Positions 22,914 through 46,347 of a stretch of DNA of 64,000 bases are shown here, in pieces; within the stretch, counting starts at the first letter, position 1, and every line of letters begins with the position of its first letter. The position numbers were made by a program, and so were the translations under genes. The notes beneath the pieces were generated by a model. It ran no database searches. It was not told the DNA's origin and worked only from the letters and a program-made list of their open reading frames with translations. The DNA lies in the IMG/VR virus record IMGVR_UViG_3300037010_002844, positions 186,001-250,000 of that record, one strand, 5' to 3'.

Positions 22914-24821
22914 GTGTTCGACGAACAGATCTTCAAATCCCCAGTCGCTCGCATCGCAGATGACGCAAAGGTCGTCTTTGTCTCAGACATGTTCGTCGAA
23001 GACTACGTCGGAGGTGCGGAACTCACATCGCAGGCACTCATCGATTCCAGTCCCGTCAAGGTGCAGAAGTTGCACACTCGTGACCTGACGCTGCAGACCC
23101 TTGAACAGGGAGCTGACAAGTTCTGGATCTTCGGCAACTTCGCTGACATTAATCCCCAGTTGATCCCCAGCATCGTTGCCAACCTGAAGTACACGGTCCT
23201 CGAGTACGACTACAAGTACTGTCGCTTCCGTTCTCCAGAGAAGCACTTTGACGCCACGAAGACTCCTTGTGACTGTCACAACCAGAACAACGGCAAGCTG
23301 GTCTCCGCGTTCTACTATGGTTCCTTGGGGCTCTGGTGGATGTCAGAGAAGCAGAAGGAACGCTACCACGCAGTATTCCCATTCTTGGCAGAAAAGGACA
23401 ACGTCGTCCTCTCTAGCGTCTTTTCACCTGAAACCTTGGGCCTCATCGAGAAACTGCGTGCCAACGCACCTGCGGAACGCAAGGGGTGGATTGTCCTGGG
23501 TTCGAACTCTTGGGTCAAGGGTGCCGGTGCTGCTGAGAAGTGGTGCATGGACAACGGCAAGGACTACCACGTGGTCTGGAACGTTCCCTACCACGAGCTA
23601 CTCGAGCAACTCTCGAAGGCAGAAGGCTTTGTCTACCTGCCGAATGGGGCAGACACCTGCCCTCGCATGGTCATTGAAGCCAAGCTATTGGGTTGCAAGC
23701 TACACCTCAACGACCACGTCCAACACAAGGACGAGGAATGGTTCAACACCGATGATCTCGAAAGCATCAAGGATTATCTGTTTGCAGCCCGCGCCATGTT
23801 TTGGAATGGTGTCAAGCACATGATGGACTACAAGCCCACCATCTCGGGCTACATGACCGTCTACAACTGCGTCACCCAAAAGTACCCGTGGAAGGAGGCT
23901 ATCTTGTCGATGGCAGAGTTCTGCGACGAGATTTGCGTAGTCGACGGTGGTAGCACTGACGGTACCTGGCAAGCGTTGCAGTTCTTGGCTTCGACTGATC
24001 CGATCCTCAAAGTCAAGCAGGTTCCGCGAGATTGGTCTCATCCACGTCACGCGGTCTTTGACGGCATGCAAAAGGCCGAAGCCCGAGCAATGTGCACCAG
24101 TGAGTACTGCTGGCAGATGGACTCCGACGAGATCGTTCACGAGGACGACGCAGCAAAGGTGATCGACTTGTGCCGTAAGATTCCCCGCGAGGCAGACGTG
24201 TTGTCACTGCCCGTCATCGAGTATTGGGGCGGACCCGAAAAGGTTCGCGTTGACATTCAGCCGTGGAAGTGGCGGCTGTCGCGTAACAAGCCCAACATCA
24301 CTCACGGGATTCCCCGTGAACTACGAACCACTGATGCAGACGGGCACCCGATGGCGCTGCCTGGCACTGATGGTTGCGACATGATCGACAAAGAGACTGG
24401 CGAGCGTCTGCCTCACGTGTCGTTCTACACACCTGACGTGGAACGCGTCAGACAATTTGCGATCATGGGCGACAACAACGCCCTCCTCCAGTATCAGTTG
24501 TGGTTCAACGCTGCAGTGAACCGACTGCCTTGCGTCTTCCACTACTCATGGTACGATCTTCCTCGTAAGATCCGCCTCTACCGTGACTACTGGCAGAACC
24601 ACTGGAACGGCCTGTGGGGCAGGGACACTTCCGACGTTGCAGAGAATAACATGATGTTCGATGTCCCGTGGTCACAGGTCACCGACGAGATGATCGAAGC
24701 TCGTGCAAAGGAGCTCAAGGACAAGCTCGGTGGCTGGATCTGGCACCGCAAATGGGACGGCAAGGTCAAGATTCCTCACATCTCTGTCGCCCGTACGCAA
24801 CCCAAGGTGATGTTGAAGTGA
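22914..24821 (+). CDS. Two-domain glycosyltransferase (GT-B/GT4-like + GT-A/GT2)
   Basis: GGAEL...DTCPRMVIEAKLLG (GT4-like), then ICVVDGGSTDGT and DSDE (GT2). Confidence 0.85.
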   Translation: MFDEQIFKSPVARIADDAKVVFVSDMFVEDYVGGAELTSQALIDSSPVKVQKLHTRDLTLQTLEQGADKFWIFGNFADINPQLIPSIVANLKYTVLEYDYKYCRFRSPEKHFDATKTPCDCHNQNNGKLVSAFYYGSLGLWWMSEKQKERYHAVFPFLAEKDNVVLSSVFSPETLGLIEKLRANAPAERKGWIVLGSNSWVKGAGAAEKWCMDNGKDYHVVWNVPYHELLEQLSKAEGFVYLPNGADTCPRMVIEAKLLGCKLHLNDHVQHKDEEWFNTDDLESIKDYLFAARAMFWNGVKHMMDYKPTISGYMTVYNCVTQKYPWKEAILSMAEFCDEICVVDGGSTDGTWQALQFLASTDPILKVKQVPRDWSHPRHAVFDGMQKAEARAMCTSEYCWQMDSDEIVHEDDAAKVIDLCRKIPREADVLSLPVIEYWGGPEKVRVDIQPWKWRLSRNKPNITHGIPRELRTTDADGHPMALPGTDGCDMIDKETGERLPHVSFYTPDVERVRQFAIMGDNNALLQYQLWFNAAVNRLPCVFHYSWYDLPRKIRLYRDYWQNHWNGLWGRDTSDVAENNMMFDVPWSQVTDEMIEARAKELKDKLGGWIWHRKWDGKVKIPHISVARTQPKVMLK

Positions 24822-25180
24822 GAAAGCCTTTTCCCAAGATGATCCGCGTCATCATCGAGTCGCCCTATGCTGGCGACATTGACAAGAACATGCGGTACGT
24901 CAGGGCCTGCATGCGTGACTGTCTAGCGAGAGGTGAGAGTCCATACGCGAGCCACGCACTGTACACTCAGGAAGGCGTCCTCCGCGATGACGTCACTGAC
25001 GAGCGAATGCACGGCATCGCCGCTGGCTTTGCATGGCGTGAGGCCTCAGATAAGACTGTCGTGTACACTGACCTCGGCATGAGTAAGGGCATGGAGTACG
25101 GCATCGCTCATGCCCAGGAGCTCGGTCACCCGATCGAGTATCGCAAGTTGGAAGGCGAGTGGTCGAATGGCAGCGCCTAA
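24818..25180 (+). CDS. DUF4406/nucleoside-2-deoxyribosyltransferase-like small protein
   Basis: VIIESPYAGD..N..Y.RAC...G..PYASH...GI..G..W...D..VVY.D.G.S.GM..GI motif; GTGA coupling. Confidence 0.65.
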   Translation: MRKPFPKMIRVIIESPYAGDIDKNMRYVRACMRDCLARGESPYASHALYTQEGVLRDDVTDERMHGIAAGFAWREASDKTVVYTDLGMSKGMEYGIAHAQELGHPIEYRKLEGEWSNGSA

Positions 25181-25262
25181 AGACAGTCGTGGCAGTTGCT
25201 GCTATGATGTTGATGACTGCCAGTGTTGACCCACCAAGATTGAGATTCCGAGGAAACCAAAG

Positions 25263-25988
25263 ATGAAGAAGATCACGATCCAGCAAAAGCTCGAATCACT
25301 CGGAGTCGATCCGGGGTCAGTGGTGATGGGCGACTTCGACTACATCGGTCGATTCACTGCTGAACGTCAGCGTGGTCTGGATGACCCCAACTACAAGAAG
25401 TACGGCGCGTTCTACCGTTCAAACTATGAGCGTGGCATCCTGATCTATCATCTCATCCGATCATTGGGCATCACGTCAATGCTCGAGATCGGATTTGGCC
25501 GCGGCTACGGAACCTTCTGTGCGGCTCGGGCCTTCTCAGATGCAGGCGTCGAAGGCAAGATCATCACCATCGATCCTGCCCTCAATGAGGACTACATCAA
25601 GATGCTAAGCCAGGTCTTTCCTCATGATTGGTTCAAGCACGTGCAGTTCATGAAGGGAACCTCGGGAGACCTCATTCCGAAGCTCGAGGGTTCCTTCGAC
25701 TTCGTCTACATCGATGGCGACCACTCGTATGCCGGCACGCGGCTGGACTGGGAGCTGACCAAGGATCGCTGGAACAAATGCCTTCTCTTTGACGACTATC
25801 ATCTGCCGTCGAAGAACGACCCAGGCATCCAGTGCCGCGACCTGATCGACGAGGTTGATGACCCGTCGAAGGAACTGATCATCATGGATCGCAGGATGTT
25901 TTTCGACGATCGTCGGTTCACTGACGATCAGGTCGACTACGGTCAGGTCCTCCTGACAAAGGGCGGTGTTTCCCGTGACGACTGGTGA
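25263..25988 (+). CDS. Class I SAM-dependent methyltransferase (Methyltransf_24-like)
   Basis: MLEIGFGRGY, FDFVYIDGDHSY, LFDDY. Confidence 0.88.
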   Translation: MKKITIQQKLESLGVDPGSVVMGDFDYIGRFTAERQRGLDDPNYKKYGAFYRSNYERGILIYHLIRSLGITSMLEIGFGRGYGTFCAARAFSDAGVEGKIITIDPALNEDYIKMLSQVFPHDWFKHVQFMKGTSGDLIPKLEGSFDFVYIDGDHSYAGTRLDWELTKDRWNKCLLFDDYHLPSKNDPGIQCRDLIDEVDDPSKELIIMDRRMFFDDRRFTDDQVDYGQVLLTKGGVSRDDW

Positions 25989-26122
25989 CAATAAGCCTTT
26001 CTTCGATCAAAGAGGCTGCCATGAAAATGGGCGTCAGCAGATCAATGATCTTGCAAGTTTTGAATGGTCATCGTGAATCTGCAAAAGGGTACGTGTACCA
26101 TCATGCCAGAACACCAAAATAG
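25985..26122 (+). CDS. Hidden mini-ORF with NUMOD1-like domain (45 aa)
   Basis: GTG overlaps the methyltransferase TGA; VTISLSSIKEAAMKMGVSRSMILQVLNGHRESAKGYVYHHARTPK*. Confidence 0.5.
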   Translation: MTISLSSIKEAAMKMGVSRSMILQVLNGHRESAKGYVYHHARTPK

Positions 26123-26891
26123 GTTTTGTTTTGTGGCACCGATGTTCAATGCATCGGAAACATTGCCCAGGATGCTTTACAGCATCTATGGGCAGTCATA
26201 TGACAACTGGAAGATCGTCCTGATCGATGATGTGTCCGATTCTGTGCATGTAGCCAACGCAAAAGACTGGCTGCAACGCTTCGATCACCTCAATTCTGGC
26301 CGTGTCACTACAATCTGGAACGCTGAGAAGAAGTGGGAGGTTGCCAACGTCCTCAGAGGTCTGCAGGAGTGTGAGGACAGCGACATCGTCTGTCGCATTG
26401 ACGCGGACGATTGGTTGACAGAGCTCGATGCTCTGACGTACCTAAACGTTCTCTACAACCAGAGCGGCGCAGACGCCCTGTGGACGGCACATCGTTGGGG
26501 TTTTACTGACAAGAACATCTCAGCTCCGATGCCCGGAGATGCTGACCCGTACAAATACCCGTGGGTCTCCAGCCACCTAAAGACCTTTCGTAAGAGCCTT
26601 CTGAATGGCGTACCTTACGAAAACTTTACCAATATGAATGGTGATCTTGTTCGTAGGGCCGGCGACCAAAGCCTTTATCTCCCGGTGTTGCATAATGCAA
26701 AGAGGCGTGGATTTGTTCCACGCGTCATGTATCACTATACCATTGATGAGCGCGGCGGTGCTGTTTATCAGACTGATGACGCAAAGTTTCAAAAAGCAGA
26801 AGCTGACTTCTTGCGCGGAAGAGGTTACGTTGCCCAAGGAAAACCGTGGGAAGAAGGTCTACAGACGTCATCACACAAAGCATCCACCTGA
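26103..26891 (+). CDS. GT2 glycosyltransferase
   Basis: Start moved to MPEHQN; VAPMFNA, IVLIDDVSD, RIDADD, AGDQ. Confidence 0.88.
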   Translation: MPEHQNRFCFVAPMFNASETLPRMLYSIYGQSYDNWKIVLIDDVSDSVHVANAKDWLQRFDHLNSGRVTTIWNAEKKWEVANVLRGLQECEDSDIVCRIDADDWLTELDALTYLNVLYNQSGADALWTAHRWGFTDKNISAPMPGDADPYKYPWVSSHLKTFRKSLLNGVPYENFTNMNGDLVRRAGDQSLYLPVLHNAKRRGFVPRVMYHYTIDERGGAVYQTDDAKFQKAEADFLRGRGYVAQGKPWEEGLQTSSHKAST

Positions 26892-27587
26892 AGTGTGTCA
26901 GTCAATTGTTGACATGTACGTCAATGAAAAGCTGTCGTCAGTTGGCATCCTGGAACGCCTTTAGGGCGCGGGTGTTGACATCAGTTACTCTGGCGTTATC
27001 AATCTGATTCATGCAGCAGGTGTGATGCGGTCACGAAGTGAAACAACGAAACACATCACGTTCACAGACACTAAAAAGTGTAAACACGGTACGTCAGATG
27101 ACGTGTGGCGGCGGGAGGTGTTGGCACGGGTCGAAACGTTCGAAGAAGCAAAACGACTCGAAGTTAAGTTCATTGCTGAATATAACACCTGTGCACTTGT
27201 TGGCGGCTTTGGGTATAACATGACCCTGGGCGGTGATGGTGGCACTTTGTCGGGCGTAGCAAACCCGTTCTATGGTCACAACCACACTCCAGAATCTGTC
27301 GAGAAAATTCGACGTACCATCGGTGACCGCCTCTCCGGATAGAACAACCCACAATGGGGTCGAAAAGGTGTGTTGAGTCCGGCATGGGGGTTAAACATTC
27401 GGAAGAGTCTCGACGTAAACGTAGTGAAAAATTACGTGGTCGTACGATCAGCGAACAAGCAAAGAACAACATGAGACAAACGTCTCAGAATCCTGAAACC
27501 AAGCGTCGTCGTAGCGAAGCACAAAAGCTTCGTCGACAGAAAGAGCGAGAAGCACGTGCGAGTCTACATCAATCGTCGACCGATTAG
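26881..27587 (+). pseudogene. Decayed homing endonuclease (HTH + partial GIY-YIG + NUMOD3)
   Basis: One frame with TAG at 26962 and 27340, then a frameshift at the G-run 27386-27390; E.KFI.EYNT..GYNMT.GGDG, NPFYGHNHTPES, KHSEESRRK; boundaries approximate. Confidence 0.8.
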
Positions 27588-28491
27588 GGGACCTTGGGGA
27601 GGTGGCGCACACTTCATTAATGCTGCCTACGAACACATTCCTGAATTGGGCCATGAAGTGGTTCCCGCTGATGAGCGTCAGGTGGCACCCGATATCATCC
27701 TGCTCGCGGGCCTTGACAGCGAGGCTGGTGGCATCTCAGCTGAGCAGGCGGTCATGTACAAGCTACACATGACGGGTCACCGCGACATTCGCATCGTCCT
27801 CCGCGTCAACGAAAATGATGCCCGGAAGGGGACTACGGGGGTCGACGAATACCTTTTGAAGCTCTCGGAGTACGTCGACGGCACGGTGTTTGTCTCGAGA
27901 TGGCTGCAGAAATATTTCGAGAAAAAAGGATGGAATTGCTCCAACAACACCGTCATCAAAAATGGGGTCGATTCAACCATCTTTGCCCCTGCGAACAAGT
28001 TCAACGACGGCAAGGTGCACATCGCGGCCCATCACTGGTCAGACAACCCGTTGAAGGGTGCCGACATCTACGAAGAAATTGATCGCTTCGTCGGAGCTCA
28101 ACCCAAGAAGTTCGCCTTCACGTACATCGGTCGACACAAGTGCGACTTTAAGCACACCACGGTTGTGAGGCCGCTGTACGGCAAGAAACTCGGTGAAGAA
28201 CTGGGTCGCCATGATGTCTATGTGTCAGCATCCAGGTTCGATCCTGGTCCCAACCACATCTTGGAATCGATTGCCTGTGGCTTGCCAACCTACGTGCACA
28301 AGGACGGCGGCGGCGCGGTCGAGTTCGCTTGTGGAGATGAGTACGTCTACCAGGACTGGAATGAGCTGCGCTTCATCCTCGAAAAAGGCGTTTTCCGACC
28401 GAATCCTGCTGCAACGGGCGATTGGAAGACATGCATCGAGGAGTATGTTAGATTCATGCAGGCCACTAGCCTACGCACGGAGAACCCATGA
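27556..28491 (+). CDS. GT4-family glycosyltransferase
   Basis: GGGAHF, NGVDS..F.P, ASRFDPGPNHILESIACGLP. Confidence 0.88.
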   Translation: MRVYINRRPIRGPWGGGAHFINAAYEHIPELGHEVVPADERQVAPDIILLAGLDSEAGGISAEQAVMYKLHMTGHRDIRIVLRVNENDARKGTTGVDEYLLKLSEYVDGTVFVSRWLQKYFEKKGWNCSNNTVIKNGVDSTIFAPANKFNDGKVHIAAHHWSDNPLKGADIYEEIDRFVGAQPKKFAFTYIGRHKCDFKHTTVVRPLYGKKLGEELGRHDVYVSASRFDPGPNHILESIACGLPTYVHKDGGGAVEFACGDEYVYQDWNELRFILEKGVFRPNPAATGDWKTCIEEYVRFMQATSLRTENP

Positions 28492-28871
28492 GTGACAAGA
28501 AGGTCGGAATCCACGAGGCCGTGTCCCAGCTGTTGGGTGAGAAGTTGAAGAAGTACATCAAACCTGAGGGTTCAGAGGAGGGCCTCAATCCCTACGTCTG
28601 CACTCAGATCTATGGTGACATCTTTGACGCGCTCGTCGAGGTCTTCACCGCCGCGCAGGTCGAGATCACCAATGAGTCGATGAACTACGTGGCGCAGCAG
28701 TACTACGATAGCATCCTCATCAACAATCGCTATGAGCTCGATCCCAACATCTTCTCGCAGCGTGCCAGGCTGGAGAACATCGAGACCAAGGAGCTGGCAT
28801 TGTTGCGCATGATGCTCCATGGGACCGACTTTTCGTTGCCGATCATTCAGGAGATCAAGCGTCGATCATGA
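28488..28871 (+). CDS. Hypothetical protein
   Basis: 127 aa, ATGA-coupled on both sides. Confidence 0.75.
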   Translation: MSDKKVGIHEAVSQLLGEKLKKYIKPEGSEEGLNPYVCTQIYGDIFDALVEVFTAAQVEITNESMNYVAQQYYDSILINNRYELDPNIFSQRARLENIETKELALLRMMLHGTDFSLPIIQEIKRRS

Positions 28872-30714: not shown

Positions 30715-30965
30715 ACTACGAAGAACTGGCTGAGAAAGTCCGTCACACCCTCGAAACATGGGAGAAAGGCCACATATCGAACGGTGAGTTCCACAGTCGG
30801 ATCTACGATCTAGTCTGGGACCCACGAGAGTTTGAGGCACTCGAGGCCGGTGAGACTGTCATGGCATTTGGCTCGTGTTGCTGCAGCGAACATCCACCTG
30901 ACAGGACATTCAAGTGCGAGATCACGATTCAACCTCACGGATACACCATCAAGAGGTGCGAGTGA
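30711..30965 (+). CDS. Hypothetical protein
   Basis: 84 aa, coupled on both sides. Confidence 0.6.
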   Translation: MNYEELAEKVRHTLETWEKGHISNGEFHSRIYDLVWDPREFEALEAGETVMAFGSCCCSEHPPDRTFKCEITIQPHGYTIKRCE

Positions 30966-31774
30966 GTGTCAAATTCTTGATGGTGACGTGTTGCCTGGAG
31001 CCGACCCGCGTCGAGATCCTGAAGTCTGTCATCAAGAACATTCAGGAACAGGCGCCAGAGCTTGTCACTGATCTCACGGTCTTCGACAATGCCTCAAACC
31101 AACCAGACGTTCACGAGTTGCTTTACGGAGCCTTCAAGAACGTCTATGTGGCAGACTCCAACGTGGGTTATTGGACCGCCATCGACTGGTGGCTGCGTTC
31201 GTTAGAGTCAGATCCTCCGAAGTACACGTACATCATCGAATCAGACATGATGCACTATGACTTCAACAAGATCTGGACCGCAGCCTCCTACCTCGACACC
31301 CACCCAGAGATCGGTGCAGTTCGACTCCATGAATACGACTACGATAACAGGCACCTTTACGACAAAGACCGGCCACTACCAGAATCACGGCGTAACATCT
31401 GGCAGTCGCACACCAACAAGGTCAACGGCAAGCGCGTTTCATTTGAAGAGTCAGAACAACCCGGCATCCTGAAGACAACGTTCCTGACACAGCTGCCTGC
31501 CCTCAATCGTTATTCAGCCATGGTCGAGTCATTCAGAAGGCTGCGCGGGATGCCCAAGTTTTCTGAGCTAGATTTCCAGCGGGCGTATTACGTGCAGTAT
31601 CCCATCAATGCCATCCTCGATGGTGGCATCTTCAATGCTGACGCGGCGAGCTGGGGAACCAAGACTGTGACGGGCTCGTGGTCAACGCCTGAAGAACTTG
31701 CCAAGATTGGTTACAAGAGCACCCGCTATGCCAACATCGTGGGTCCCGAAGGGTACAAAGTCACCAGGCTGTGA
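30962..31774 (+). CDS. GT2-like glycosyltransferase
   Basis: GTG start coupled to the upstream stop; TVFDNAS, SNVGY..A, YIIESD. Confidence 0.75.
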   Translation: MSVKFLMVTCCLEPTRVEILKSVIKNIQEQAPELVTDLTVFDNASNQPDVHELLYGAFKNVYVADSNVGYWTAIDWWLRSLESDPPKYTYIIESDMMHYDFNKIWTAASYLDTHPEIGAVRLHEYDYDNRHLYDKDRPLPESRRNIWQSHTNKVNGKRVSFEESEQPGILKTTFLTQLPALNRYSAMVESFRRLRGMPKFSELDFQRAYYVQYPINAILDGGIFNADAASWGTKTVTGSWSTPEELAKIGYKSTRYANIVGPEGYKVTRL

Positions 31775-32802
31775 TAGAATGGCCACAGATGTCGCGGTAC
31801 CTCATTTTCGGTGGAACGGGCTCCCTGGGCAAAAAGCTGATCGAACGGTTGTCGCCGCCCGATCAAGTTGCTGTCTATTCACGGGACGAGGCTAAACACT
31901 GGACGATTCGCAATGAGCTTGCGGCCCGTCCTCGTGCCTCTGATCTCAAGTTTTACGTTGGCGACATCCGTGATCCTTCCCGTGTCAAGGACGTCATTCG
32001 CCAGACTCAACCCACCCACATTATCATCGCCGCTGCGTTGAAGCAGGTCGATACCTGCGAACTGTCGCCCACTGAGGCGATTGCCACAAACCTGCAAGGC
32101 ACTGTCAACGTTGTCAATGCCTTGAATGAGTTGCGTCCAACGTGGCTCGAGGCTTGCCTCTTCGTCTCTACCGACAAGGCGTGTGCACCCGTCAACGTCT
32201 ACGGCATGTGCAAGGCCGCCTCAGAACGTGTCGTGACCAGTCAGTCAATGACGGGTCACCAGTGGATACGCTATCTGGCAGTTCGCTATGGAAACGTCCT
32301 GGAATCACGCGGCAGTATCATTCCGCTGTTCAAGTACCAAGCCGAGACTCAGCCTTACCTGACTGTCACCGATCCGAATATGACGAGGTACGTCATGACA
32401 CTCGACGATTCTGTCGATCTGATTTTGACTGCTTTCAAAAAGGGTGAGTCGGGTGAAACCTGGATCCCGCGGCTGCCTGCCATGAAGATCGGCGACCTCG
32501 CGGAAATCTTTGCCGAGCGCCACGGGAAACAAGTGAAGATCATCGGCCTGCGTCCAGGTGAAAAGATGCACGAAGACCTGATCAATGCATCTGAATCAGT
32601 GCGCACCACATTGAGCAACGACAAGCAGAACTACATCATCGGACCAGCGCACCTCGCAGGCAAAAATGATGCGTTCACATACTCCAGCAATCACCAGGTC
32701 TTCACCAAGAACCAGCTGAAAGAACATTTGACACGCTTGGGCATCATCGACAAGTCGTCGGATGAGTTTGAGGGTCGTTCAATCGAGGAGATTCGCAAGT
32801 GA
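31771..32802 (+). CDS. UDP-GlcNAc 4,6-dehydratase (PseB/CapD-like, Polysacc_synt_2)
   Basis: GGTGSLG, YSRDE.K, AAALKQV, STDKA..PVNVYG..K, VRYGNV..SRGS, GLRPGEKMHE. Confidence 0.92.
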   Translation: MIEWPQMSRYLIFGGTGSLGKKLIERLSPPDQVAVYSRDEAKHWTIRNELAARPRASDLKFYVGDIRDPSRVKDVIRQTQPTHIIIAAALKQVDTCELSPTEAIATNLQGTVNVVNALNELRPTWLEACLFVSTDKACAPVNVYGMCKAASERVVTSQSMTGHQWIRYLAVRYGNVLESRGSIIPLFKYQAETQPYLTVTDPNMTRYVMTLDDSVDLILTAFKKGESGETWIPRLPAMKIGDLAEIFAERHGKQVKIIGLRPGEKMHEDLINASESVRTTLSNDKQNYIIGPAHLAGKNDAFTYSSNHQVFTKNQLKEHLTRLGIIDKSSDEFEGRSIEEIRK

Positions 32803-33944
32803 GCAAGACGTACCCACTGTTCAAGGTTCACGTGGACAAGCCCCGGGCTCTTAACGAGATCGAAAAGGTCTTTGCTTCGGGTTTCATCAACGAAGGCCTC
32901 GAGGTCACCAAGTTGACCGCGGCCATGAAGCACGAGCTGCAGGCCGAGAATCTGATTCTCGTCAACAGCTGCACTTCAGCACTGACGCTGGCACTGCACC
33001 TCTCTGGCGTCGATCATCGCTGTAACGTCGTCTCAACGCCAATGACGTGTGTGGCGACTAACACGCCGATCGTAGCCGCGGGCGCGCGGATCAACTGGGC
33101 CGACGTGGACCCTGAAACAGGCATGCTCACTCCTGAGACAGTCGAGGCCGCCATCGATGACGACACTCGAGCTGTAATGGTTGTGGCCTGGGCAGGCACG
33201 CCGCCCGACTTGAGAGGCATCCGTGAGGTGTGCAATGCTCACAGCGTTCCAATGATCCTGGACGCAGCGCACGCATTTGACGCCGGCTTCGGCGGCATGC
33301 CTGTTCACACCTGGGCCGACTATGCCTGTTACTCATTCCAGGCCATCAAACACTTCACCACCGGCGACGGCGGCGCCCTAATCTGTCGGGCGCCCAATGC
33401 TTACCGCAGAGCCAAGGCACTGAAGTGGTTTGGCATCGACCGTGACCGTGCCAAGGATGAGAACGGCAACTGGAAGGGCCAACAGTGGGACGTCGACATC
33501 CTCGAGAGCGGCTTCAAGTTCAACATGAACAACGTGGCGGCAGCCATTGGCCTGTCGCAACTGCCTCACATCGATGAGATTTTGGGCGCTCACCGCGCAA
33601 ATGCGTCAGTCTATGACCAGGTCTTCCGCGATTCAAAGACAGTGCGGCCGGTCAAGCGTCACCCCGAAGCGTTCTCTAGTCACTGGGTTTACACCATGCG
33701 TGTCAATCACGAGTATTCGAGGTTGACGCGCGATGAGTTGTTGAAGGCCCTCAATGAAGAAGGAATCAAGGCTGGCGTGGTTCATGTGCCCAATGATGAC
33801 TACTCGGCATTCGCGCACTTCTACAAGAGCCTGCCTGGCGTCCGTGGATTTGCTGCTGAGCAATTTTCGCTGCCATGTGGCTGGTGGATCACGGAAGACG
33901 ACGTTCACCACATCGCCAAGCGCGTCCTCGAGTTGACTCGATGA
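32799..33944 (+). CDS. DegT/DnrJ/EryC1/StrS sugar aminotransferase
   Basis: VNSCTSAL, DAAHA, YSFQAIKH (PLP Lys), GDGG, GFKFNM. Confidence 0.93.
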   Translation: MSKTYPLFKVHVDKPRALNEIEKVFASGFINEGLEVTKLTAAMKHELQAENLILVNSCTSALTLALHLSGVDHRCNVVSTPMTCVATNTPIVAAGARINWADVDPETGMLTPETVEAAIDDDTRAVMVVAWAGTPPDLRGIREVCNAHSVPMILDAAHAFDAGFGGMPVHTWADYACYSFQAIKHFTTGDGGALICRAPNAYRRAKALKWFGIDRDRAKDENGNWKGQQWDVDILESGFKFNMNNVAAAIGLSQLPHIDEILGAHRANASVYDQVFRDSKTVRPVKRHPEAFSSHWVYTMRVNHEYSRLTRDELLKALNEEGIKAGVVHVPNDDYSAFAHFYKSLPGVRGFAAEQFSLPCGWWITEDDVHHIAKRVLELTR

Positions 33945-34660
33945 GCACTCCGCGCGTCTTTGTTGGGACCCTCTATTGCAAAGAGGGCGATTTTCAGGAA
34001 CACTGCAAGATGATTAGTTTGCAGCGAGATGTCAACATTTCACACCATGTGATTGCTGACCTGCCTGAAAAGGACGCGCACAATTCCCTGTGGGACGCCT
34101 GGAACAGATCGAAGACGGAATATGACCTCTTCGTCAAGATCGATGCTGACACCGTCCTCCGTGACGAAGAGACCATAAAGCGAATTTGGGCCTTGTTCGA
34201 AGGCAATCCACGGCTCACTGGCATCCAGGCTCCACTGCACGACTACATGACTGATGGCCTAATCAATGGCCTCAACTGCTTTTCGCCGAAGGTGATTTTC
34301 AACCCGACGAATGATGGTCTGTATTGTGACCGCGGCGTCGACACGGGCCACGATCAAGTCCTGCGTCAAGGACAACTGCCTCCCGAGCTCGAGCCCGCGG
34401 GCTATCACTGTCATCACGCAACAGACAAGCAAGCATTTCACTATGGCCTTCACCGGGCCCTGAAGGGTCAGGCTGACATCATGTTGCGTGTGCAAAAGGC
34501 GTGGCTGACACATCGTGATCGAATCCGTGGCCTCGCCTTGGCGGGCACCGCAGCGGCGCCCTACCTGTGGAATCACAACTACAACGATCCTGAATTTGAG
34601 TCCGAATACCAGCGACTAGTGAAGGAGTTCGATGCGTCCCACGATCATCCAGCTCGTTGA
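33941..34660 (+). CDS. Putative GT-A fold glycosyltransferase
   Basis: Start moved to MSTPRV (ATGA coupling); DLFVKIDADTV DxD motif. Confidence 0.65.
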   Translation: MSTPRVFVGTLYCKEGDFQEHCKMISLQRDVNISHHVIADLPEKDAHNSLWDAWNRSKTEYDLFVKIDADTVLRDEETIKRIWALFEGNPRLTGIQAPLHDYMTDGLINGLNCFSPKVIFNPTNDGLYCDRGVDTGHDQVLRQGQLPPELEPAGYHCHHATDKQAFHYGLHRALKGQADIMLRVQKAWLTHRDRIRGLALAGTAAAPYLWNHNYNDPEFESEYQRLVKEFDASHDHPAR

Positions 34661-35549
34661 CTCAGTTCAATACGTTGAGACCAACTGCTTTCAACACCAA
34701 CTGCTGTCGGCACTGCGTCGCAAGGCTGAAGTGGTTCAGGTGCCCGCTGATCAACTGCCCAGATTTCGCGTTCCAGAAGGAACGCATCACGTGCTCAGCT
34801 GCCTCAAGATGAGGACGCTACACAGGCTTAAGGACCAGCTTAGGGCCGCCCTGGGCAATTGTCAACTCGTACATTATGAGCAAGATCCTTGGCATGGCTA
34901 CATGGACGACAGCCCGTGGCAAGGAATTTTTGCAGATATAAAACAAAGACTTAATCTGTCGTTCGTTGCAGTCACCACGCGATGGTGGGCTGACTACATG
35001 GAGGCCGACGGGATCCCGGCACGCTTCGTCAAGATGTGGATGATGCCAGAGTACTGCGACCGCGGGCCAGCGTACCTCGAGAGACCCATTGACCTGGGAT
35101 TCGTCGGCAGTCTACATCCTTACCGCAGAAAACTGTTCGACCTGATTGAAGACAGCGGCTATTCCATCAACACTTCAGGAGGTTACGACTACTCGGGTTA
35201 CCTCAAAGCGTTGCATGGAATCAAGGTCTATCTTCACTCTGAAGACTGTCCGATCAAAGTCAATGGTGTGTTCCACAATCTCAATGACGGACTGTGGGCC
35301 CGTGAGATCGAGGTCGCCGCACGAGGTTGCATCTCGATTCGCAACTGGGGGTCTGAGTCTGACTCGTACCTGGGAAGCGATATTCGCACTGCGTTCCTCT
35401 ACCGTGACCCTCAAGATGTCCCTGGAATAATCCGGTCAATTGAGCAGATGGATCCAACAGAACGCCAGAAAAGAATTGACGACACTTTGGAGTACATTCG
35501 TTCAGCAGATGAGTGGGGTCGGACTGCAGAAGTTCTGATCAGAGGTTGA
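34632..35549 (+). CDS. Putative glycosyltransferase (CgeB/Glyco_trans_1_2-like)
   Basis: IDLGFVGS...R, REIEVAARG; cluster context. Confidence 0.65.
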   Translation: MRPTIIQLVDSVQYVETNCFQHQLLSALRRKAEVVQVPADQLPRFRVPEGTHHVLSCLKMRTLHRLKDQLRAALGNCQLVHYEQDPWHGYMDDSPWQGIFADIKQRLNLSFVAVTTRWWADYMEADGIPARFVKMWMMPEYCDRGPAYLERPIDLGFVGSLHPYRRKLFDLIEDSGYSINTSGGYDYSGYLKALHGIKVYLHSEDCPIKVNGVFHNLNDGLWAREIEVAARGCISIRNWGSESDSYLGSDIRTAFLYRDPQDVPGIIRSIEQMDPTERQKRIDDTLEYIRSADEWGRTAEVLIRG

Positions 35550-36343
35550 TGATGACTTATAAAGCAGGTCACTACACGCACGTTTCACAGAAGGCAGAGA
35601 TCGGACTCGGCGTCGAACTGGAACTCGGTGATTGCAGCTACATCGGCCCGGGCGTTCGGTTCACCGGCCGCGGGCGAGTCAAGTTTGGTGACTACTGTAA
35701 GGTCCACGCGGGTTGCTTCATCAACGCTGGTGACGGTGGTTACGTAGAGTTCGGCCACAACTGCTGGTTCGGCGAGCGCACCGTCCTGGACGGCACCGGT
35801 GGCCTGTTGGGTGGCAACAACATCGGCGTCGGTATTGCCTCACACCTCTACACTCACATTGCCCACGGCGACGTCATCGAAGGCTGCCGATTCATGAGCA
35901 CCAAGCAGATGTTGTTGGAAGACGACGTTTGGTTCGTCGGCCAGTGCCTCGTCTCGCCGATCCACGCCAAGGCCAAATCGATGGCCATGTTGGGTTCTGT
36001 GGTGACGAAGGATATGGAGGTGAACCACGTCTATGCAGGCACCCCAGCCAAAGACATCACTGACAAAGTTGGCCCTCCTTGGATTCCTCGGACTGACGAG
36101 GACAAGCTGCGGTTGCTGCAAGAGACCAAGGCACGTTACCTGTCGCTGCACGAGCCCGATTACACGGGTTCCGCACAGCACACCATCGTGCCTTGCGTTG
36201 GCCTGCCGGACAAGGCCTTGCGGGCCCAAGGTGTGACCTACATCGACGTGGTCTCAAGGAAGTACACGAAGAATTTGTCTGAGGATGAACGTCGATTCAT
36301 GTCATGGCTCATCTCATATAAAGGTCGCTACGTCCCAGAATGA
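35549..36343 (+). CDS. Left-handed beta-helix (hexapeptide) sugar O/N-acyltransferase
   Basis: Hexapeptide repeats (IGPGVR, FGDYCKV, FGHNCWF), GSVVTKD....YAGTPAK. Confidence 0.85.
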   Translation: MMTYKAGHYTHVSQKAEIGLGVELELGDCSYIGPGVRFTGRGRVKFGDYCKVHAGCFINAGDGGYVEFGHNCWFGERTVLDGTGGLLGGNNIGVGIASHLYTHIAHGDVIEGCRFMSTKQMLLEDDVWFVGQCLVSPIHAKAKSMAMLGSVVTKDMEVNHVYAGTPAKDITDKVGPPWIPRTDEDKLRLLQETKARYLSLHEPDYTGSAQHTIVPCVGLPDKALRAQGVTYIDVVSRKYTKNLSEDERRFMSWLISYKGRYVPE

Positions 36344-36382
36344 ATTGAACAAGGACCCCGGTGAGGGGTAAAGTAAGGTAAC

Positions 36383-37342
36383 ATGAAGAGCGTTGCAGTT
36401 ATTGGGCAAGGGTTTGTCGGTGGATCGCTGACCACTGTGTTCGCTGAACGAGGGTTCGACGTCTATGTCTACGATAAGGCTGGTAAGACTGCCACAGGAG
36501 CGCAGTACTCGAAGTTCGTCCGCGGCGTGGCACAACCGTGCGAGTCGGTGGCAGACCTGGTCTCCTCCTGTGAGGAAAAGAAGAATTTTTCAGGCGTCTA
36601 TTTTGTCGCCCTGCCGACGCCGATGTACGAGGACGGCACTGCCGACCTTTCGATTGTAGAGGGCGTGCTCGATGAGCTGGCGGCCTGTACTGGCAATCGC
36701 ATCGCTGTCGTCAAATCAACGGTGCCACCGGGCTCGACAGAACGTTGGAACAAGAAGTACGAAGGCACTGGACTCCGCGTGATCTTCAATCCCGAGTTCC
36801 TGACTGAAGCCAATGCCCTCGATGACATGCGTAATCAGGATCGTATCATCCTTGGTGGACCTCGTCCGTGGATCAACACCGTCAAGTTGATCTTCCAGAC
36901 GGCCTTTCCGAAGGTGACGCTCATCAAGACGTCTTCCACCACGGCTGAGATGGTGAAGTACACCATCAACTGCTTCCTGGCCACCAAGGTGTCCTTCGCC
37001 AACGAGATGGCACAGGTGTGTGAGGCGCTCGATAAGCGTGGACTGAACATCGACTACGATAAGGTCGTGGAATATGCTAGGCTCGACAAGCGCCTTGGCA
37101 ACTCTCACTGGGCCGTCCCGGGTCCGGTGCCCACCCACGATGGCCGCTACGTTCGTGGCTTTGGAGGACACTGCTTCCCAAAGGACATGAACGCATTGAT
37201 CGCTGTGGCCAAGGACTTGGGCGTTGACCCGAAGGTGATGGCCGCGTCTTGGGCCAAGAACCTCGAGGTTCGTGGTCCTGAGGATCGTGACTGGGAACAC
37301 ATGCAGGGCCGCGCTGTTAGCAAGAAAGGAGGCAAGAAGTGA
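36383..37342 (+). CDS. ugd: UDP-glucose/GDP-mannose dehydrogenase family (lacks C-terminal UDP-binding domain)
   Basis: IGQGFVG, ALPTP, KSTVPPG, FNPEFL, GFGGHCFPKD. Confidence 0.88.
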   Translation: MKSVAVIGQGFVGGSLTTVFAERGFDVYVYDKAGKTATGAQYSKFVRGVAQPCESVADLVSSCEEKKNFSGVYFVALPTPMYEDGTADLSIVEGVLDELAACTGNRIAVVKSTVPPGSTERWNKKYEGTGLRVIFNPEFLTEANALDDMRNQDRIILGGPRPWINTVKLIFQTAFPKVTLIKTSSTTAEMVKYTINCFLATKVSFANEMAQVCEALDKRGLNIDYDKVVEYARLDKRLGNSHWAVPGPVPTHDGRYVRGFGGHCFPKDMNALIAVAKDLGVDPKVMAASWAKNLEVRGPEDRDWEHMQGRAVSKKGGKK

Positions 37343-38883: not shown

Positions 38884-38935
38884 ACCGCCACGATCGGACC
38901 AGAGAGGTCAGCGTGGCACTCACGGAGAGTGAATC

Positions 38936-42873: not shown

Positions 42874-42875
42874 CT

Positions 42876-42947: not shown

Positions 42948-43016
42948 TCATGGAAACTGCCTTTATCTGTGATCACTGCGGCAAGCGTTGTAGCCTCGAG
43001 CAAATGCTTGAGCTCC

Positions 43017-46343: not shown

Positions 46344-46347
46344 TCAG

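What the first reader, a model, noticed from the sequence alone, without database searches (positions are those of the whole stretch)
22914..37342. Phage-encoded rare amino-sugar pathway with about 9 glycosyltransferase genes (plus 2 more at 45-47.5 kb)
A 4,6-dehydratase, a DegT aminotransferase and a hexapeptide acyltransferase are the established trio for 4-acylamido-4,6-dideoxyhexoses (bacillosamine, viosamine, pseudaminic acid precursors). A UDP-sugar dehydrogenase and a methyltransferase are also present. There is no Wzx/Wzy/ABC export gene, so this does not look like a host O-antigen locus. Inference: glycosylation of the Ser/Thr-rich virion proteins (as in giant-virus fibrils) or of DNA as a shield.
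Basis: partly seen in the sequence, partly recalled or inferred. Interest (0 to 1): 0.6.

Follow-up and report, generated by a model that had tools for sequence, protein, structure and literature searches.

The report
Jumbo-phage copy of bacterial glycan cassette
A 309-kb sediment/microbial-mat jumbo phage carries an operon-like block of about 15 genes (amino-sugar enzymes plus eight to ten soluble glycosyltransferases) that is the sister of a bacterial LPS-type glycan cassette with its membrane exporter removed, so it builds a complex sugar chain inside the infected cell on a target that sequence alone cannot name.

Summary
Window 22914-37342 (+) is a tightly packed run of glycan genes: 8 glycosyltransferase genes (4 GT-A, 4 GT-B), a PseB/Mg534-type UDP-GlcNAc 4,6-dehydratase, a DegT 4-aminotransferase, a Methyltransf_24 methyltransferase, a hexapeptide acetyltransferase and a UDP-sugar-dehydrogenase-like protein. 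Two more GT4 genes lie at 45090-47508.

Corrections:
- The acetyltransferase looks O-acetyltransferase-like and occurs in only 2 of 7 related phage loci.
- The dehydrogenase lacks its C-terminal UDP-binding domain.
- Pseudaminic/legionaminic acid is excluded: the genome has no NeuB and no CMP-sugar synthetase.

New findings:
- The cassette is conserved in order in six other huge-phage contigs.
- Its closest cellular relatives are syntenic bacterial LPS-type loci that also carry a GNAT, an ABCB-type exporter, GT9 or Wzy_C genes. The phage copies lack all of these.
- The phage also encodes a T4-type dCMP hydroxymethylase, so it probably has 5hmC DNA. That gene sits 120 kb away beside its own epimerase and a far more widespread GT-B, which is the likelier DNA-glycosylation module.

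The acceptor is unresolved: virion proteins about 0.45, host lipid-linked glycan about 0.3, DNA about 0.1. This is a new variant of a known kind, of moderate interest.

The parts
22914..24821 (+). 635-aa glycosyltransferase. The C-terminal half is a GT2 (GT-A) domain. The N-terminal ~327 aa has no family assignment; GT-B-like motifs were seen by eye only.
   Evidence: Pfam Glycos_transf_2 at residues 328-436, E 1e-9. Conserved at 61-75% in L004 and L008. hhalign of the N-terminal domain against two GT-B families was not significant.
24839..25180 (+). DUF7768, a nucleoside 2-deoxyribosyltransferase-like protein. It is an accessory insert with no homologue found in the related loci that cover this position.
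   Evidence: Pfam DUF7768 E 8e-30; PHROG 355 and 24212; no homologue in the loci.
25263..25988 (+). SAM-dependent methyltransferase (Methyltransf_24, TylF-like), a probable sugar O-methyltransferase.
   Evidence: Pfam E 9e-14. Conserved at 59-73% in relatives. The Polynucleobacter locus carries a TylF/Methyltransf_24 gene.
26064..26891 (+). GT2 glycosyltransferase.
   Evidence: Pfam Glycos_transf_2 E 5e-13; conserved at 48-72%.
27556..28491 (+). GT-B glycosyltransferase (weak GT1/GT4 match), counterpart of the ~340-aa gene of the bacterial cassettes.
   Evidence: Pfam E about 1e-3; PF00534 genome scan, 19.9 bits; 30-36% identity to bacterial cassette genes.
28488..28871 (+). Conserved 127-aa protein of unknown function, joined to both neighbours by 4-nt overlaps.
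   Evidence: Present in all related phage loci that cover this position, at 29-69% identity. No Pfam or PHROG hit.
28868..29800 (+). GT4 glycosyltransferase.
   Evidence: Pfam Glyco_trans_1_4 E 9e-11 and Glycos_transf_1 E 5e-10; about 25% identity to bacterial cassette GT4 genes.
29797..30714 (+). GT4 glycosyltransferase.
   Evidence: Pfam E 2e-5; 34-38% identity to bacterial cassette GT4 genes over ~140 aa.
30711..30965 (+). 84-aa ORF of unknown function.
   Evidence: One homologue found, in L004 at 43%; no family hit.
30980..31774 (+). GT-A (GT2-like) glycosyltransferase. The true start is probably near 30980, although the ORF opens at 30914.
   Evidence: Atlas features score 0.98 to viral GT2 clusters, and its atlas model matches GT2 models at TM 0.60-0.67. 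DNAS and ESD motifs are invariant in alignment A2. 30-36% identity to bacterial cassette genes.
31771..32802 (+). UDP-GlcNAc 4,6-dehydratase of the short soluble PseB/FlaA1/Mg534 (inverting) class.
   Evidence: Polysacc_synt_2 E 7e-78. PseB model 258 bits, below its 408-bit cut-off. Best PDB hit 4TQG (Megavirus Mg534) at 244.8 bits over the full length. TDK and YxxxK motifs present.
32799..33944 (+). PLP-dependent NDP-4-keto-sugar 4-aminotransferase (DegT family).
   Evidence: DegT E 2e-76. PseC model 226 bits, below cut-off. Best PDB hits are 4XAU/4ZWV (deposited as putative aminotransferase) and CalS13 (4ZAS), then ArnB.
33941..34660 (+). GT-A glycosyltransferase (239 aa), with its start overlapping the DegT stop.
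   Evidence: Atlas features score 0.97 to GT2 clusters; its atlas model (pTM 0.87) matches GT2 models. A DAD motif is invariant in A1. 33-50% identity to bacterial cassette genes.
34632..35549 (+). GT-B glycosyltransferase (305 aa).
   Evidence: Homologues carry PF13524 Glyco_trans_1_2; 29-40% identity to bacterial cassette genes.
35549..36343 (+). Left-handed beta-helix (hexapeptide) acetyltransferase, an accessory gene.
   Evidence: NCBIfam WcaF-like E 4e-12; NeuD/PglB/VioB model only 22 bits against a 161-bit cut-off. Best PDB hits are 8VR6 and maltose/galactoside O-acetyltransferases. Present only in the window and L004.
36383..37342 (+). UDP-sugar 6-dehydrogenase-like protein with the NAD-binding and central domains only.
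   Evidence: Pfam N-terminal domain E 6e-26 and central domain E 4e-23; no C-terminal domain. GGHCFPKD Cys motif kept. 316-353 aa in the five relatives that show it. About 30% identity over ~240 aa to the full-length bacterial enzyme in L041/L095.
37339..37734 (+). 131-aa ORF of unknown function. It is possibly, but not shown to be, the missing dehydrogenase C-terminal domain.
   Evidence: No family hit; a homologue only in L004.
45090..46343 (+). GT4 glycosyltransferase, first of a pair downstream of a PD-(D/E)XK nuclease gene.
   Evidence: Pfam Glycos_transf_1 E 3e-13. In the distant phage L010 its homologue lies two genes upstream of a PseB-like gene.
46294..47508 (+). GT4 glycosyltransferase, second of the pair.
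   Evidence: Pfam E 3e-5. Its L010 homologue is 677 aa, with a C-terminal part that gives a sub-threshold MptE/Maf-like match and sits directly beside the PseB-like gene.

Best explanation
The region is a polycistronic glycan-assembly cassette. A clade of huge phages shares it with a bacterial LPS-type cassette through a common origin, and the phage version has no membrane parts.

Proposed mechanism:
1. Host UDP-GlcNAc is converted by the PseB/Mg534-type dehydratase to a UDP-2-acetamido-2,6-dideoxy-hex-4-ulose. This step is inferred from homology and motifs.
2. DegT aminates C4, giving a UDP-4-amino-4,6-dideoxy-HexNAc. The stereochemistry is not known.
3. The amine or a hydroxyl is acylated by a variable acyltransferase: the hexapeptide enzyme here, a GNAT with or without a ketoreductase in sister phages.
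4. The truncated dehydrogenase-like enzyme and the methyltransferase add further diversity.
5. Eight soluble glycosyltransferases, plus probably the GT4 pair at 45-47.5 kb, add sugars one after another in the cytoplasm.

Every phage copy examined lacks the exporter, and the genome has no priming transferase or ligase. The most likely acceptor is therefore something that stays in the cytoplasm until lysis. I favour virion proteins, giving a glycan coat like the fibril glycans of giant viruses or the capsid and tail glycans of mycobacteriophages.

Shown: gene identities, operon-like packing, conservation in phages, sister relation and synteny to bacterial cassettes, and absence of membrane components.
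Inferred: the sugar structure and the acceptor.
For: - Family assignments.
- Operon-like packing. Eight gene junctions between 28488 and 37342 are 4-nt start/stop overlaps, and two more overlap by other lengths (coordinates). Only one terminator-like site lies on the + strand, and site counts are not above shuffled expectation.
- The same genes in nearly the same order occur in six IMG/VR huge-phage contigs, mostly at 40-76% amino-acid identity, and in two further assemblies.
- In the DegT tree the phage sequences form a supported group (SH-aLRT 96) that also holds two MAG contigs. This group lies in a 99-supported clade with the bacterial-cassette group.
- Bacterial loci hold dehydratase, DegT, GT-A, (GNAT), GT-A, GT-B, (ABC exporter), GT-B, GT4, GT4 in the same relative order.
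- No phage version examined has the exporter.
- The genome has no Bac_transf, no GT9, no NeuB and no CTP_transf_3. No cluster protein has a hydrophobic segment and the genome has no polytopic transporter-like protein.
- The dehydratase is nearest to Megavirus Mg534, which makes fibril sugars.
- The cassette lies on the same strand as, and just upstream of, baseplate and large structural-type genes at 49-64 kb.
- A separate hmC-linked epimerase and GT-B module can account for DNA glycosylation.
Against: - Nothing ties any of these glycosyltransferases to a protein acceptor. No enzyme recognisable as a protein O- or N-glycosyltransferase was found.
- No Ser/Thr-rich tracts occur in putative virion proteins.
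- The nearest cellular homologues work in LPS-type, lipid-linked pathways. Peripheral glycosyltransferases of such pathways also lack membrane segments, so a host-lipid acceptor using host flippase and ligase fits the gene content equally well.
- The timing of expression is unknown.
- The phage probably has 5hmC DNA, so a DNA acceptor cannot be excluded.
- Sugar identity rests on sub-threshold matches to PseB and PseC models.
Confidence: 0.42

Rival explanations
1. Host-envelope remodelling. The phage enzymes act as peripheral membrane glycosyltransferases on a host lipid-linked acceptor, either undecaprenyl-PP-sugar or lipid A-core. The host's own priming enzyme, ABC flippase (MsbA/PglK/Wzk type) and ligase finish the job. 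The infected cell's LPS or glycoprotein glycan is thereby changed or maintained, for example to block superinfection or to stop progeny adsorbing to debris.
For: - The closest cellular relatives are syntenic cassettes inside LPS-type loci. These contain RmlC, ManC, full-length UGDH, GT9 heptosyltransferase-family genes, Wzy_C and an ABCB-type exporter.
- Six glycosyltransferase types are shared one-to-one between phage and bacterial cassettes. This argues for a similar oligosaccharide and possibly a similar acceptor.
- LPS-related glycosyltransferase and nucleotide-sugar genes are commonly reported in environmental phage genomes and are read this way (PMC10980836).
Against: - All phage copies examined have lost the exporter that sits in the middle of the bacterial cassette.
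- The genome has no priming transferase, ligase or polytopic membrane protein of that kind.
- The cassette is a stable, syntenic part of a lytic-type jumbo-phage genome rather than a variable island.
- The host is unknown, so it cannot be checked that it offers a compatible acceptor and flippase.
Confidence: 0.3
2. DNA hypermodification. The glycosyltransferases build or extend a complex glycan, containing the 4-amino sugar, on 5-hydroxymethylcytosine in phage DNA as a shield against restriction and CRISPR nucleases.
For: - The genome encodes a T4 gp42-type dCMP hydroxymethylase: 257.7 bits to PDB 1B49, with the cytosine-specifying Asp and the Asp169-equivalent kept (residue logic from PMC13326640).
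- No T4 alpha- or beta-glucosyltransferase family member was found, though the beta-glucosyltransferase search had no positive control.
- Phage DNA glycans of up to three sugars, built by GT-A and GT-B enzymes related to LPS and teichoic-acid enzymes, are known (10.1101/2023.12.21.572611; PMC13326640).
- A nucleoside 2-deoxyribosyltransferase-like gene sits in the cluster.
Against: - The hydroxymethylase is 120 kb away. It is flanked by its own GalE/TviC-like epimerase and a 445-aa GT-B (AF2 pLDDT 92.6; Foldseek hits to MshA, BshA and glycogen synthases at E about 1e-12).
- That trio is conserved in more than 415 relatives, far more widely than the cassette, whose 305-aa glycosyltransferase has 25 relatives.
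- Ten glycosyltransferases exceed any known DNA glycan.
- The cassette's nearest relatives are bacterial LPS-type genes.
- The nucleoside-transferase-like gene has no homologue in the relatives that cover its position.
Confidence: 0.1
3. The cassette makes a soluble or small-molecule glycoconjugate, such as an oligosaccharide, a glycosylated metabolite or a glycosylated host protein, used for host takeover. Alternatively it is a largely passive, recently captured bacterial block.
For: - No acceptor-specific feature is detectable.
- Two cluster proteins conserved among the phage loci have no assignable function: the 127-aa protein and the N-terminal half of the 635-aa protein.
- The nearest solved relatives of DegT are natural-product enzymes such as CalS13.
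Against: - Conservation at mostly 40-76% identity with kept gene order across a phage clade argues against a passive passenger.
- Ten glycosyltransferases are unusual for a small-molecule product.
Confidence: 0.1

Closest known systems
Unnamed bacterial LPS-type cassette: Polynucleobacter victoriensis MWH-VicM1, Rhizobiales isolate AFS038290, Thalassospira lucentensis HF2, and Bdellovibrionales, Hyphomicrobiaceae, Xanthobacteraceae and Rokuibacteriota MAGs
   Same: PseB-like dehydratase, DegT and six glycosyltransferase types (two GT-A, two GT-B, two GT4) occur in the same relative order at 24-64% identity. A Methyltransf_24/TylF methyltransferase, a UGDH and a hexapeptide or GNAT acetyltransferase lie nearby. 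In the DegT tree the bacterial-cassette group and the phage group share a 99-supported clade.
   Different: In the three cassette loci annotated in full, the bacterial versions carry a GNAT (directly after the GT-A that follows DegT in two of them) and an ABCB-type exporter among the glycosyltransferase genes. They sit among GT9, Wzy_C, RmlC or ManC genes. The phage versions have none of these, have a C-terminally truncated dehydrogenase, and add a 635-aa two-domain glycosyltransferase and a 127-aa protein.
Megavirinae fibril-glycosylation clusters (Megavirus chilensis Mg534-Mg539; Mimivirus viosamine/bacillosamine genes)
   Same: A virus-encoded, bacterial-like amino- or deoxy-sugar pathway starting from UDP-GlcNAc, together with several soluble glycosyltransferases and no export genes. 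Mg534 is the closest solved homologue of the phage dehydratase.
   Different: After the dehydratase, Megavirus uses a reductase and an epimerase (giving RhaNAc and QuiNAc) rather than a 4-aminotransferase. The host there is a eukaryote, and the target (capsid fibrils) is proven there but not here.
Mycobacteriophage virion glycosylation (Freeman et al. 2023, cited in PMC12619734)
   Same: Phage-encoded cytoplasmic glycosyltransferases that decorate virion proteins.
   Different: As cited in PMC12619734, the glycans sit at the C-termini of the capsid and tail-tube subunits. From my own recollection, not checked here, those phages carry far fewer glycosyltransferase genes and no nucleotide-amino-sugar pathway. 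No comparable acceptor tail is visible in this phage.
Phage DNA glycan hypermodification clusters (T-even glucosylation; RB69/DLP3 arabinosylation; 5mYOX- or ThyA-homologue-linked glycosyltransferase clusters)
   Same: The genome has a ThyA-family dCMP hydroxymethylase with an adjacent epimerase and GT-B. This is the architecture called 'epimerase plus neighbouring GT' in 10.1101/2023.12.21.572611.
   Different: That module is 120 kb from the finding. The finding's cluster is not adjacent to any base-modifying enzyme and has many more glycosyltransferases than any described DNA pathway (one to three sugars).
Pseudaminic acid (PseBCHGIF) and di-N-acetylbacillosamine (PglFED) pathways
   Same: The first two steps (4,6-dehydratase, then 4-aminotransferase acting on UDP-GlcNAc) are the same chemistry. 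PseB and PseC are the best-scoring NCBIfam models.
   Different: Scores are below the equivalog cut-offs. This genome has no PseH-type GNAT, no PseI/NeuB, no PseF and no PglD-type acetyltransferase. A more distant phage (L010) does have NeuB twice, with a CMP-sugar synthetase.

Membership tests
Pseudaminic acid biosynthesis (PseB, C, H, G, I, F) | [quoted passage not shown] | tested here: inconclusive
   TIGR03589 scores 258.5 bits against a 407.75-bit cut-off. TDK and YxxxK motifs are present. The best solved relative is the inverting enzyme Mg534.
Pseudaminic acid biosynthesis (PseB, C, H, G, I, F) | PseI (NeuB-family condensing synthase) and PseF (CMP-sugar synthetase) | tested here: not met
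   No PF03102 and no PF02348 match anywhere in the 309-kb genome; the controls rang.
Pseudaminic acid biosynthesis (PseB, C, H, G, I, F) | PseH-type GNAT N-acetyltransferase following the aminotransferase | tested here: not met
   No GNAT in the window's cluster. One is present in the sister phage loci L005 and L101 and in bacterial cassettes.
Di-N-acetylbacillosamine pathway (PglF, E, D) | PglD/NeuD-type hexapeptide N-acetyltransferase | tested here: not met
   TIGR03570 NeuD/PglB/VioB scores 22.4 bits against a 160.8-bit cut-off. The best matches are WcaF and maltose/galactoside O-acetyltransferases.
Di-N-acetylbacillosamine pathway (PglF, E, D) | Retaining PglF-type dehydratase | tested here: inconclusive
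   PglF (WlaL, 5BJU) scores 106 bits against 245 bits for the inverting Mg534. Stereochemistry cannot be read from sequence.
Bacterial O-antigen / LPS glycan locus | Nucleotide-sugar enzymes plus multiple glycosyltransferases, syntenic with bona fide loci | tested here: met
   Synteny with loci in isolate genomes and MAGs that also hold GT9, Wzy_C, ABC exporter, RmlC and ManC genes.
Bacterial O-antigen / LPS glycan locus | Priming phosphoglycosyltransferase, flippase or ABC exporter, polymerase or ligase | tested here: not met
   No Bac_transf, no GT9 and no polytopic membrane protein of that kind in the genome. No exporter in any phage copy examined. WecA, Wzx and Wzy were tested only through my hydrophobicity scan, not with their own profiles.
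Phage DNA glycosylation gene cluster | Base-hydroxylating or hydroxymethylating enzyme (ThyA homologue or 5mYOX) in the genome | tested here: met
   T4 gp42-type dCMP hydroxymethylase at G000:63595-64254, 257.7 bits to 1B49.
Phage DNA glycosylation gene cluster | Glycosyltransferases adjacent to the base-modifying enzyme | tested here: not met
   The finding's cluster lies about 120 kb from the hydroxymethylase. A different GT-B and an epimerase are the adjacent genes, and that trio is conserved independently.
Phage DNA glycosylation gene cluster | Modified nucleosides in virion DNA | not testable with these tools
   Needs LC-MS of virion DNA; no isolate exists.
Virus-encoded virion glycosylation (giant-virus fibrils, mycobacteriophage capsid and tail) | Virus-encoded soluble glycosyltransferases and sugar pathway without export machinery | tested here: met
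Virus-encoded virion glycosylation (giant-virus fibrils, mycobacteriophage capsid and tail) | Glycan demonstrated on virion proteins, or a recognisable acceptor motif | tested here: inconclusive
   No S/T-rich tracts in large ORFs. A direct test needs virions.

The most novel reading that the evidence does not exclude
The cassette extends the 5hmC-linked sugar, laid down by the conserved hydroxymethylase, epimerase and GT-B module, into a long heteroglycan containing a 4-amino sugar on the phage DNA. That would be by far the most complex DNA glycan known, and the first with a cationic or acylamido dideoxy-hexose.
Probability: 0.1. Interest if true: 0.9.

Novelty: new variant of a known kind. 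Interest (0 to 1): 0.55.

Why it matters
Phage-borne glycosyltransferases and nucleotide-sugar genes are usually listed as 'LPS auxiliary genes' without further analysis. Here a complete assembly line with about ten transferases is a stable, syntenic part of a clade of 300-kb phages. Its bacterial sister cassette can be identified, and the difference between the two is specific: the exporter is gone from every phage copy examined, and here the GNAT is gone too.

This gives a concrete, testable case of a bacterial surface-glycan pathway turned into a cytoplasmic one by a phage. It parallels what giant viruses did for their fibrils. If the product coats virions, it would be the most elaborate glycan coat known in a phage and possibly mimics host LPS. 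If it goes to host LPS or DNA, it is an unusually large counter-defence or exclusion investment.

The genome also links probable 5hmC DNA, a widespread uncharacterised GT-B family (more than 415 members, no Pfam domain) and NAD salvage in one phage.

Tried and rejected
- Pseudaminic or legionaminic acid end product: rejected. The genome has no NeuB and no CMP-sugar synthetase.
- T4-type DNA glucosyltransferases: none found, though the PF09198 control rang nowhere, so that blank is weak.
- Profile searches of the two unassigned GT-A families and of the 445-aa family against PDB sequences: nothing.
- First AF2 model of the 445-aa protein, from 4 sequences: pLDDT 53, discarded. It was redone with 41 sequences.
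- N-terminal half of the 635-aa protein as a GT-B: motifs by eye only. hhalign against two GT-B families was not significant and Pfam was blank even at E 5.
- Isoelectric points of the glycosyltransferases as a hint of DNA binding: not discriminating.
- Ser/Thr-rich acceptor tracts: none found.
- Promoter and terminator consensus scans: not above shuffled expectation.
- Intergenic 9-mer enrichment for phage promoters: only tRNA T-loops came up.
- Stop-codon recoding, prompted by suppressor tRNAs: no sign in ORF structure. Everything was read with table 11.
- Cultured-phage relatives: no DNA match. There was no protein match for the 305-aa or 445-aa glycosyltransferases, and only distant DegT and dehydratase hits.
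- Co-occurrence of the cassette with the hmC trio. Both near-complete relatives carry the cassette and the 445-aa GT-B, but only G001 has a gp42-type hydroxymethylase. G002 has a divergent ThyA homologue. The other contigs are fragments, so this does not discriminate.
- Not used: read laying, complex prediction and the large representative-protein search. No claim needed them.

Full report
**Setting**

The window is positions 186001-250000 of a 309,433-bp IMG/VR virus record rated 91% complete. The same genome was assembled from a second sample with different ends (309,481 bp), which suggests a circularly permuted, essentially complete genome. It also occurs in four sediment and microbial-mat metagenome runs.

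The window carries several phage-type genes:
- PhoH, a phage-type helicase and a baseplate wedge protein.
- NMNAT-Nudix plus NAMPT NAD salvage, PTH2, and a PD-(D/E)XK nuclease.

The genome has 49 tRNA genes and a tmRNA. The nearest cultured phages (Tunturiibacter phage Tunturi_5, Bacillus phage G, Xanthomonas and Ralstonia jumbo phages) share only about 28-32% identity in the helicase. There is no DNA-level match among 50,697 phage records. It is an uncultured jumbo phage.

**The observation**

The run from 22914 to 37734 is entirely on the + strand. Eight junctions between 28488 and 37342 are 4-nt start/stop overlaps, and two more overlap by other lengths (coordinates). Only one terminator-like site lies on that strand, and promoter-like and terminator-like counts are not above shuffled expectation. 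It reads as one or a few long transcription units.

Glycosyltransferases:
- Pfam finds five directly.
- Two ORFs without a Pfam hit (30980-31774 and 33941-34660) are GT-A enzymes. This rests on language-model features (0.97-0.98 to viral GT2 clusters), on their atlas structure models, and on invariant DxD-type motifs.
- 34632-35549 is a GT-B, because its relatives carry PF13524.
- That gives eight GT genes in the interval and two GT4 genes at 45090-47508.
- Genome-wide scans with PF00535 and PF00534 find only one further hit outside the window, at about 295 kb.

**What sugar**

The dehydratase:
- It belongs to the short soluble Polysacc_synt_2 class and keeps the Thr-Asp-Lys and Tyr-x3-Lys motifs.
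- It scores best against the PseB model, though below its equivalog cut-off.
- Its closest solved relative, over the full length, is PDB 4TQG (244.8 bits). [quoted passage not shown]

The DegT enzyme scores best against PseC (again sub-threshold). Among solved structures it is nearest to 4XAU/4ZWV, deposited only as 'putative aminotransferase', and to CalS13 (4ZAS), followed by ArnB.

The inferred product is a UDP-4-amino-4,6-dideoxy-HexNAc. Its stereochemistry is unknown.

The pathway does not continue to a nonulosonic acid, because the genome has neither NeuB nor a CMP-sugar synthetase.

- The hexapeptide protein resembles WcaF and maltose/galactoside O-acetyltransferases rather than PglD/NeuD.
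- It occurs only here and in L004.
- Sister phages L005 and L009 instead carry a short-chain reductase, a 305-aa protein (Acetyltransf_9 in one of them) and a GNAT directly after DegT.
- The acyl decoration is therefore the variable part of the cassette.

The 'UDP-sugar dehydrogenase' keeps the NAD-binding and central domains and the catalytic Cys motif but has no C-terminal UDP-binding domain. It is similarly short in the five relatives that show it. Its activity is open.

**Relatives in phages**

A scan of IMG/VR with the dehydratase found seven loci. In six of them, including contigs of 340 and 324 kb, the same genes occur in nearly the same order, mostly at 40-76% amino-acid identity. In three of them the NAD-salvage genes follow, as they do here. 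Two further assemblies (299 and 117 kb) show the same.

The gaps between conserved genes hold homing-endonuclease-like ORFs.

A more distant phage (L010) has homologues of the GT4 pair next to a PseB-like gene. That gene is followed by two NeuB genes, a class-III aminotransferase and a CMP-sugar synthetase. There are also sub-threshold MptE/Maf-like matches, one in the C-terminal part of the GT4 homologue. This ties the 45-47.5 kb pair to amino-sugar glycans, but in a different pathway.

**Relatives in bacteria, the main new result**

A scan of one genome per species, using the phage DegT alignment, returned 63 loci. In a dozen of them the neighbours match the phage cassette gene for gene:

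| Gene | Identity to phage counterpart |
|---|---|
| Dehydratase | 49-64% |
| DegT | 51-60% |
| GT-A matching 33941 | 34-50% |
| GT-A matching 30980 | 30-36% |
| GT-B matching 34632 | 29-40% |
| GT-B matching 27556 | 29-36% |
| GT4 matching 29797 | 34-38% |
| GT4 matching 28868 | 24-26% |

These loci lie on megabase contigs of isolates (Polynucleobacter victoriensis, Thalassospira lucentensis), on a 141-kb contig of a Rhizobiales isolate, and in MAGs of Hyphomicrobiaceae, Xanthobacteraceae, Bdellovibrionales and Rokuibacteriota. Apart from sugar-nucleotide enzymes, no other gene of the phage matches them. They are bacterial glycan loci rather than prophages.

Precomputed annotations show what else they hold:
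- A GNAT, in the three cassette loci annotated in full.
- An ABC exporter among the glycosyltransferase genes. Two of the three carry both ABC_membrane and ABC_tran domains (543-568 aa); the third shows ABC_tran only (565 aa).
- GT9 heptosyltransferase-family genes, a Wzy_C protein, RmlC, ManC, a full-length UGDH and TylF-type methyltransferases.

The exporter of the Rhizobiales locus is of the ABCB/MsbA class by sequence.

In a DegT tree the phage sequences, together with two MAG contigs, form a supported group (SH-aLRT 96). The bacterial-cassette group is supported at 99. Both lie, with the Thalassospira sequence, in a 20-row clade supported at 99. The branching order among the three was left unresolved, and the direction of transfer was not tested.

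That is true of the family but not of the phage copy. Every phage version examined lacks the exporter. The whole phage genome lacks a priming phosphoglycosyltransferase, GT9 and any polytopic membrane protein of the Wzx/Wzy/WaaL/ABC kind. No cluster protein has a hydrophobic segment.

**DNA as acceptor**

The genome encodes a T4 gp42-type dCMP hydroxymethylase at G000:63595-64254 (257.7 bits to PDB 1B49). Two residues bear on its product:
- It keeps the Asp that specifies cytosine.
- It keeps an Asp at the position equivalent to ThyA Asp169. Replacement of that residue by Asn marks 5-hydroxy-dCMP synthases (PMC13326640).

5hmC DNA is therefore likely.

Its neighbours are a GalE/TviC-like epimerase and a 445-aa protein without any Pfam domain. 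With a 41-sequence alignment this protein folds at pLDDT 92.6 into a GT-B. Foldseek matches MshA, BshA, GlgM and glycogen synthases at E about 1e-12. These are the same structural neighbours reported for DNA-modifying phage GT-Bs (10.1101/2023.12.21.572611).

How widely the module is conserved:
- The GT-B family has more than 415 members at 57-67% identity among those listed.
- The three genes lie together, with at most a few short ORFs between them, in most loci examined.
- Both near-complete relatives have the GT-B near a ThyA-family gene.

This trio is a self-sufficient candidate for DNA glycosylation. It is much more widespread than the cassette, whose 305-aa glycosyltransferase has only 25 relatives. 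That lowers, but does not remove, the chance that the cassette acts on DNA.

**Weighing the acceptors**

The gene content fits three readings.

*1. Virion proteins.*
- For: every membrane step has been lost, repeatedly across the phage copies. The cassette lies upstream of, and co-oriented with, baseplate and large structural-type genes. Giant viruses and mycobacteriophages provide precedents.
- Against: no protein-specific glycosyltransferase and no acceptor motif are visible.

*2. A host lipid-linked acceptor.*
- For: the homology to LPS-type cassettes. Peripheral glycosyltransferases never have membrane segments anyway, and the host could supply flippase and ligase.
- Against: the exporter is missing from every phage copy examined, and the host is unknown.

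*3. DNA.*
- For: the hmC pathway.
- Against: the points in the previous section.

I put these at about 0.42-0.45, 0.30 and 0.10, with the remainder for other products. The biochemical core is much firmer, at about 0.8. That core is UDP-GlcNAc converted to a 4-amino-4,6-dideoxy-HexNAc, which is then decorated and built into a hetero-oligosaccharide by soluble transferases.

**Novelty**

Phage glycosyltransferase and nucleotide-sugar 'auxiliary' genes are widely reported (PMC10980836; PMC12619734). Virion and DNA glycosylation by phages are both known.

Three things are new here:
- The scale: about 15 genes and ten transferases.
- The cassette's stable inheritance in a huge-phage clade.
- The identified bacterial sister cassette, with the exporter cleanly absent from the phage copies.

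I found no cultured phage with it and no paper describing it in the searches made. I rate it a new variant of a known kind.

**Method notes**

All translations used table 11. Suppressor tRNAs are present, but ORF structure gives no sign of recoding, so no other code was applied.

Noticed in passing
window 42801-42949; also G000:288775-288850: Two tandem tRNAs with a CUA anticodon (amber suppressors) lie in the window, and a UUA-anticodon (ochre suppressor) tRNA lies elsewhere in the genome. The genome uses TGA for 172 of 222 ORF ends. ORF structure shows no in-gene TAG or TAA recoding. The genome has 49 tRNA genes in all, plus a tmRNA.
   Followed up: partly
G000:63595-67891 (outside the window; L015:8595-12891): A T4 gp42-type dCMP hydroxymethylase, a GalE/TviC-like epimerase and a 445-aa GT-B with no Pfam domain lie together (AF2 pLDDT 92.6). 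The GT-B family has more than 415 members, and the three genes recur close together in huge phages. This is a probable 5hmC DNA glycosylation module of an uncharacterised transferase family.
   Followed up: yes
window 37873-40800: NMNAT-Nudix (NadR-like) and NAMPT NAD-salvage genes, followed by a dual-specificity phosphatase, sit directly after the glycan cassette. The two NAD-salvage genes follow the cassette in two of the related phage loci and one follows in a third.
   Followed up: partly
window 41281-42131: A PTH2-type peptidyl-tRNA hydrolase and a tRNA_bind-domain protein lie next to the suppressor tRNAs.
   Followed up: no
window 27022-27342 and 44358-45059: Small non-conserved ORFs give weak NUMOD3 matches. 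They are probably homing-endonuclease remnants in the gaps of the cluster. A relative (L101) has NUMOD3 and GIY-YIG/NUMOD3 genes in gaps of its cluster.
   Followed up: partly
window 24839-25180: A DUF7768 / nucleoside 2-deoxyribosyltransferase-like gene is inserted between the first glycosyltransferase and the methyltransferase. No homologue was found in the related loci that cover this position.
   Followed up: partly
G000:83873-87762 (L016:2873-6762): A DnaE-type PHP / Pol III alpha gene is interrupted by intein/HINT pieces.
   Followed up: no
G000:294443-295958: A 146-aa protein with five hydrophobic segments lies beside the only PF00534-family glycosyltransferase hit outside the window.
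   Followed up: no
L010:9974-19212: A more distant phage contig carries a full nonulosonic-acid set: a PseB-like gene, two NeuB genes, a class-III aminotransferase, a CMP-sugar synthetase and an oxidoreductase. Two of its proteins give sub-threshold MptE/Maf-like matches, one of them in the C-terminal part of the homologue of the window's 46294 GT4.
   Followed up: partly
L032 and L033 (MAG contigs labelled Hyphomicrobium and Leptospiraceae): Their DegT sequences fall inside the phage group in the tree. L033 (L100) has ordinary bacterial LPS genes around it. This points to more than one exchange between phages and bacteria, or to mis-binned contigs.
   Followed up: partly
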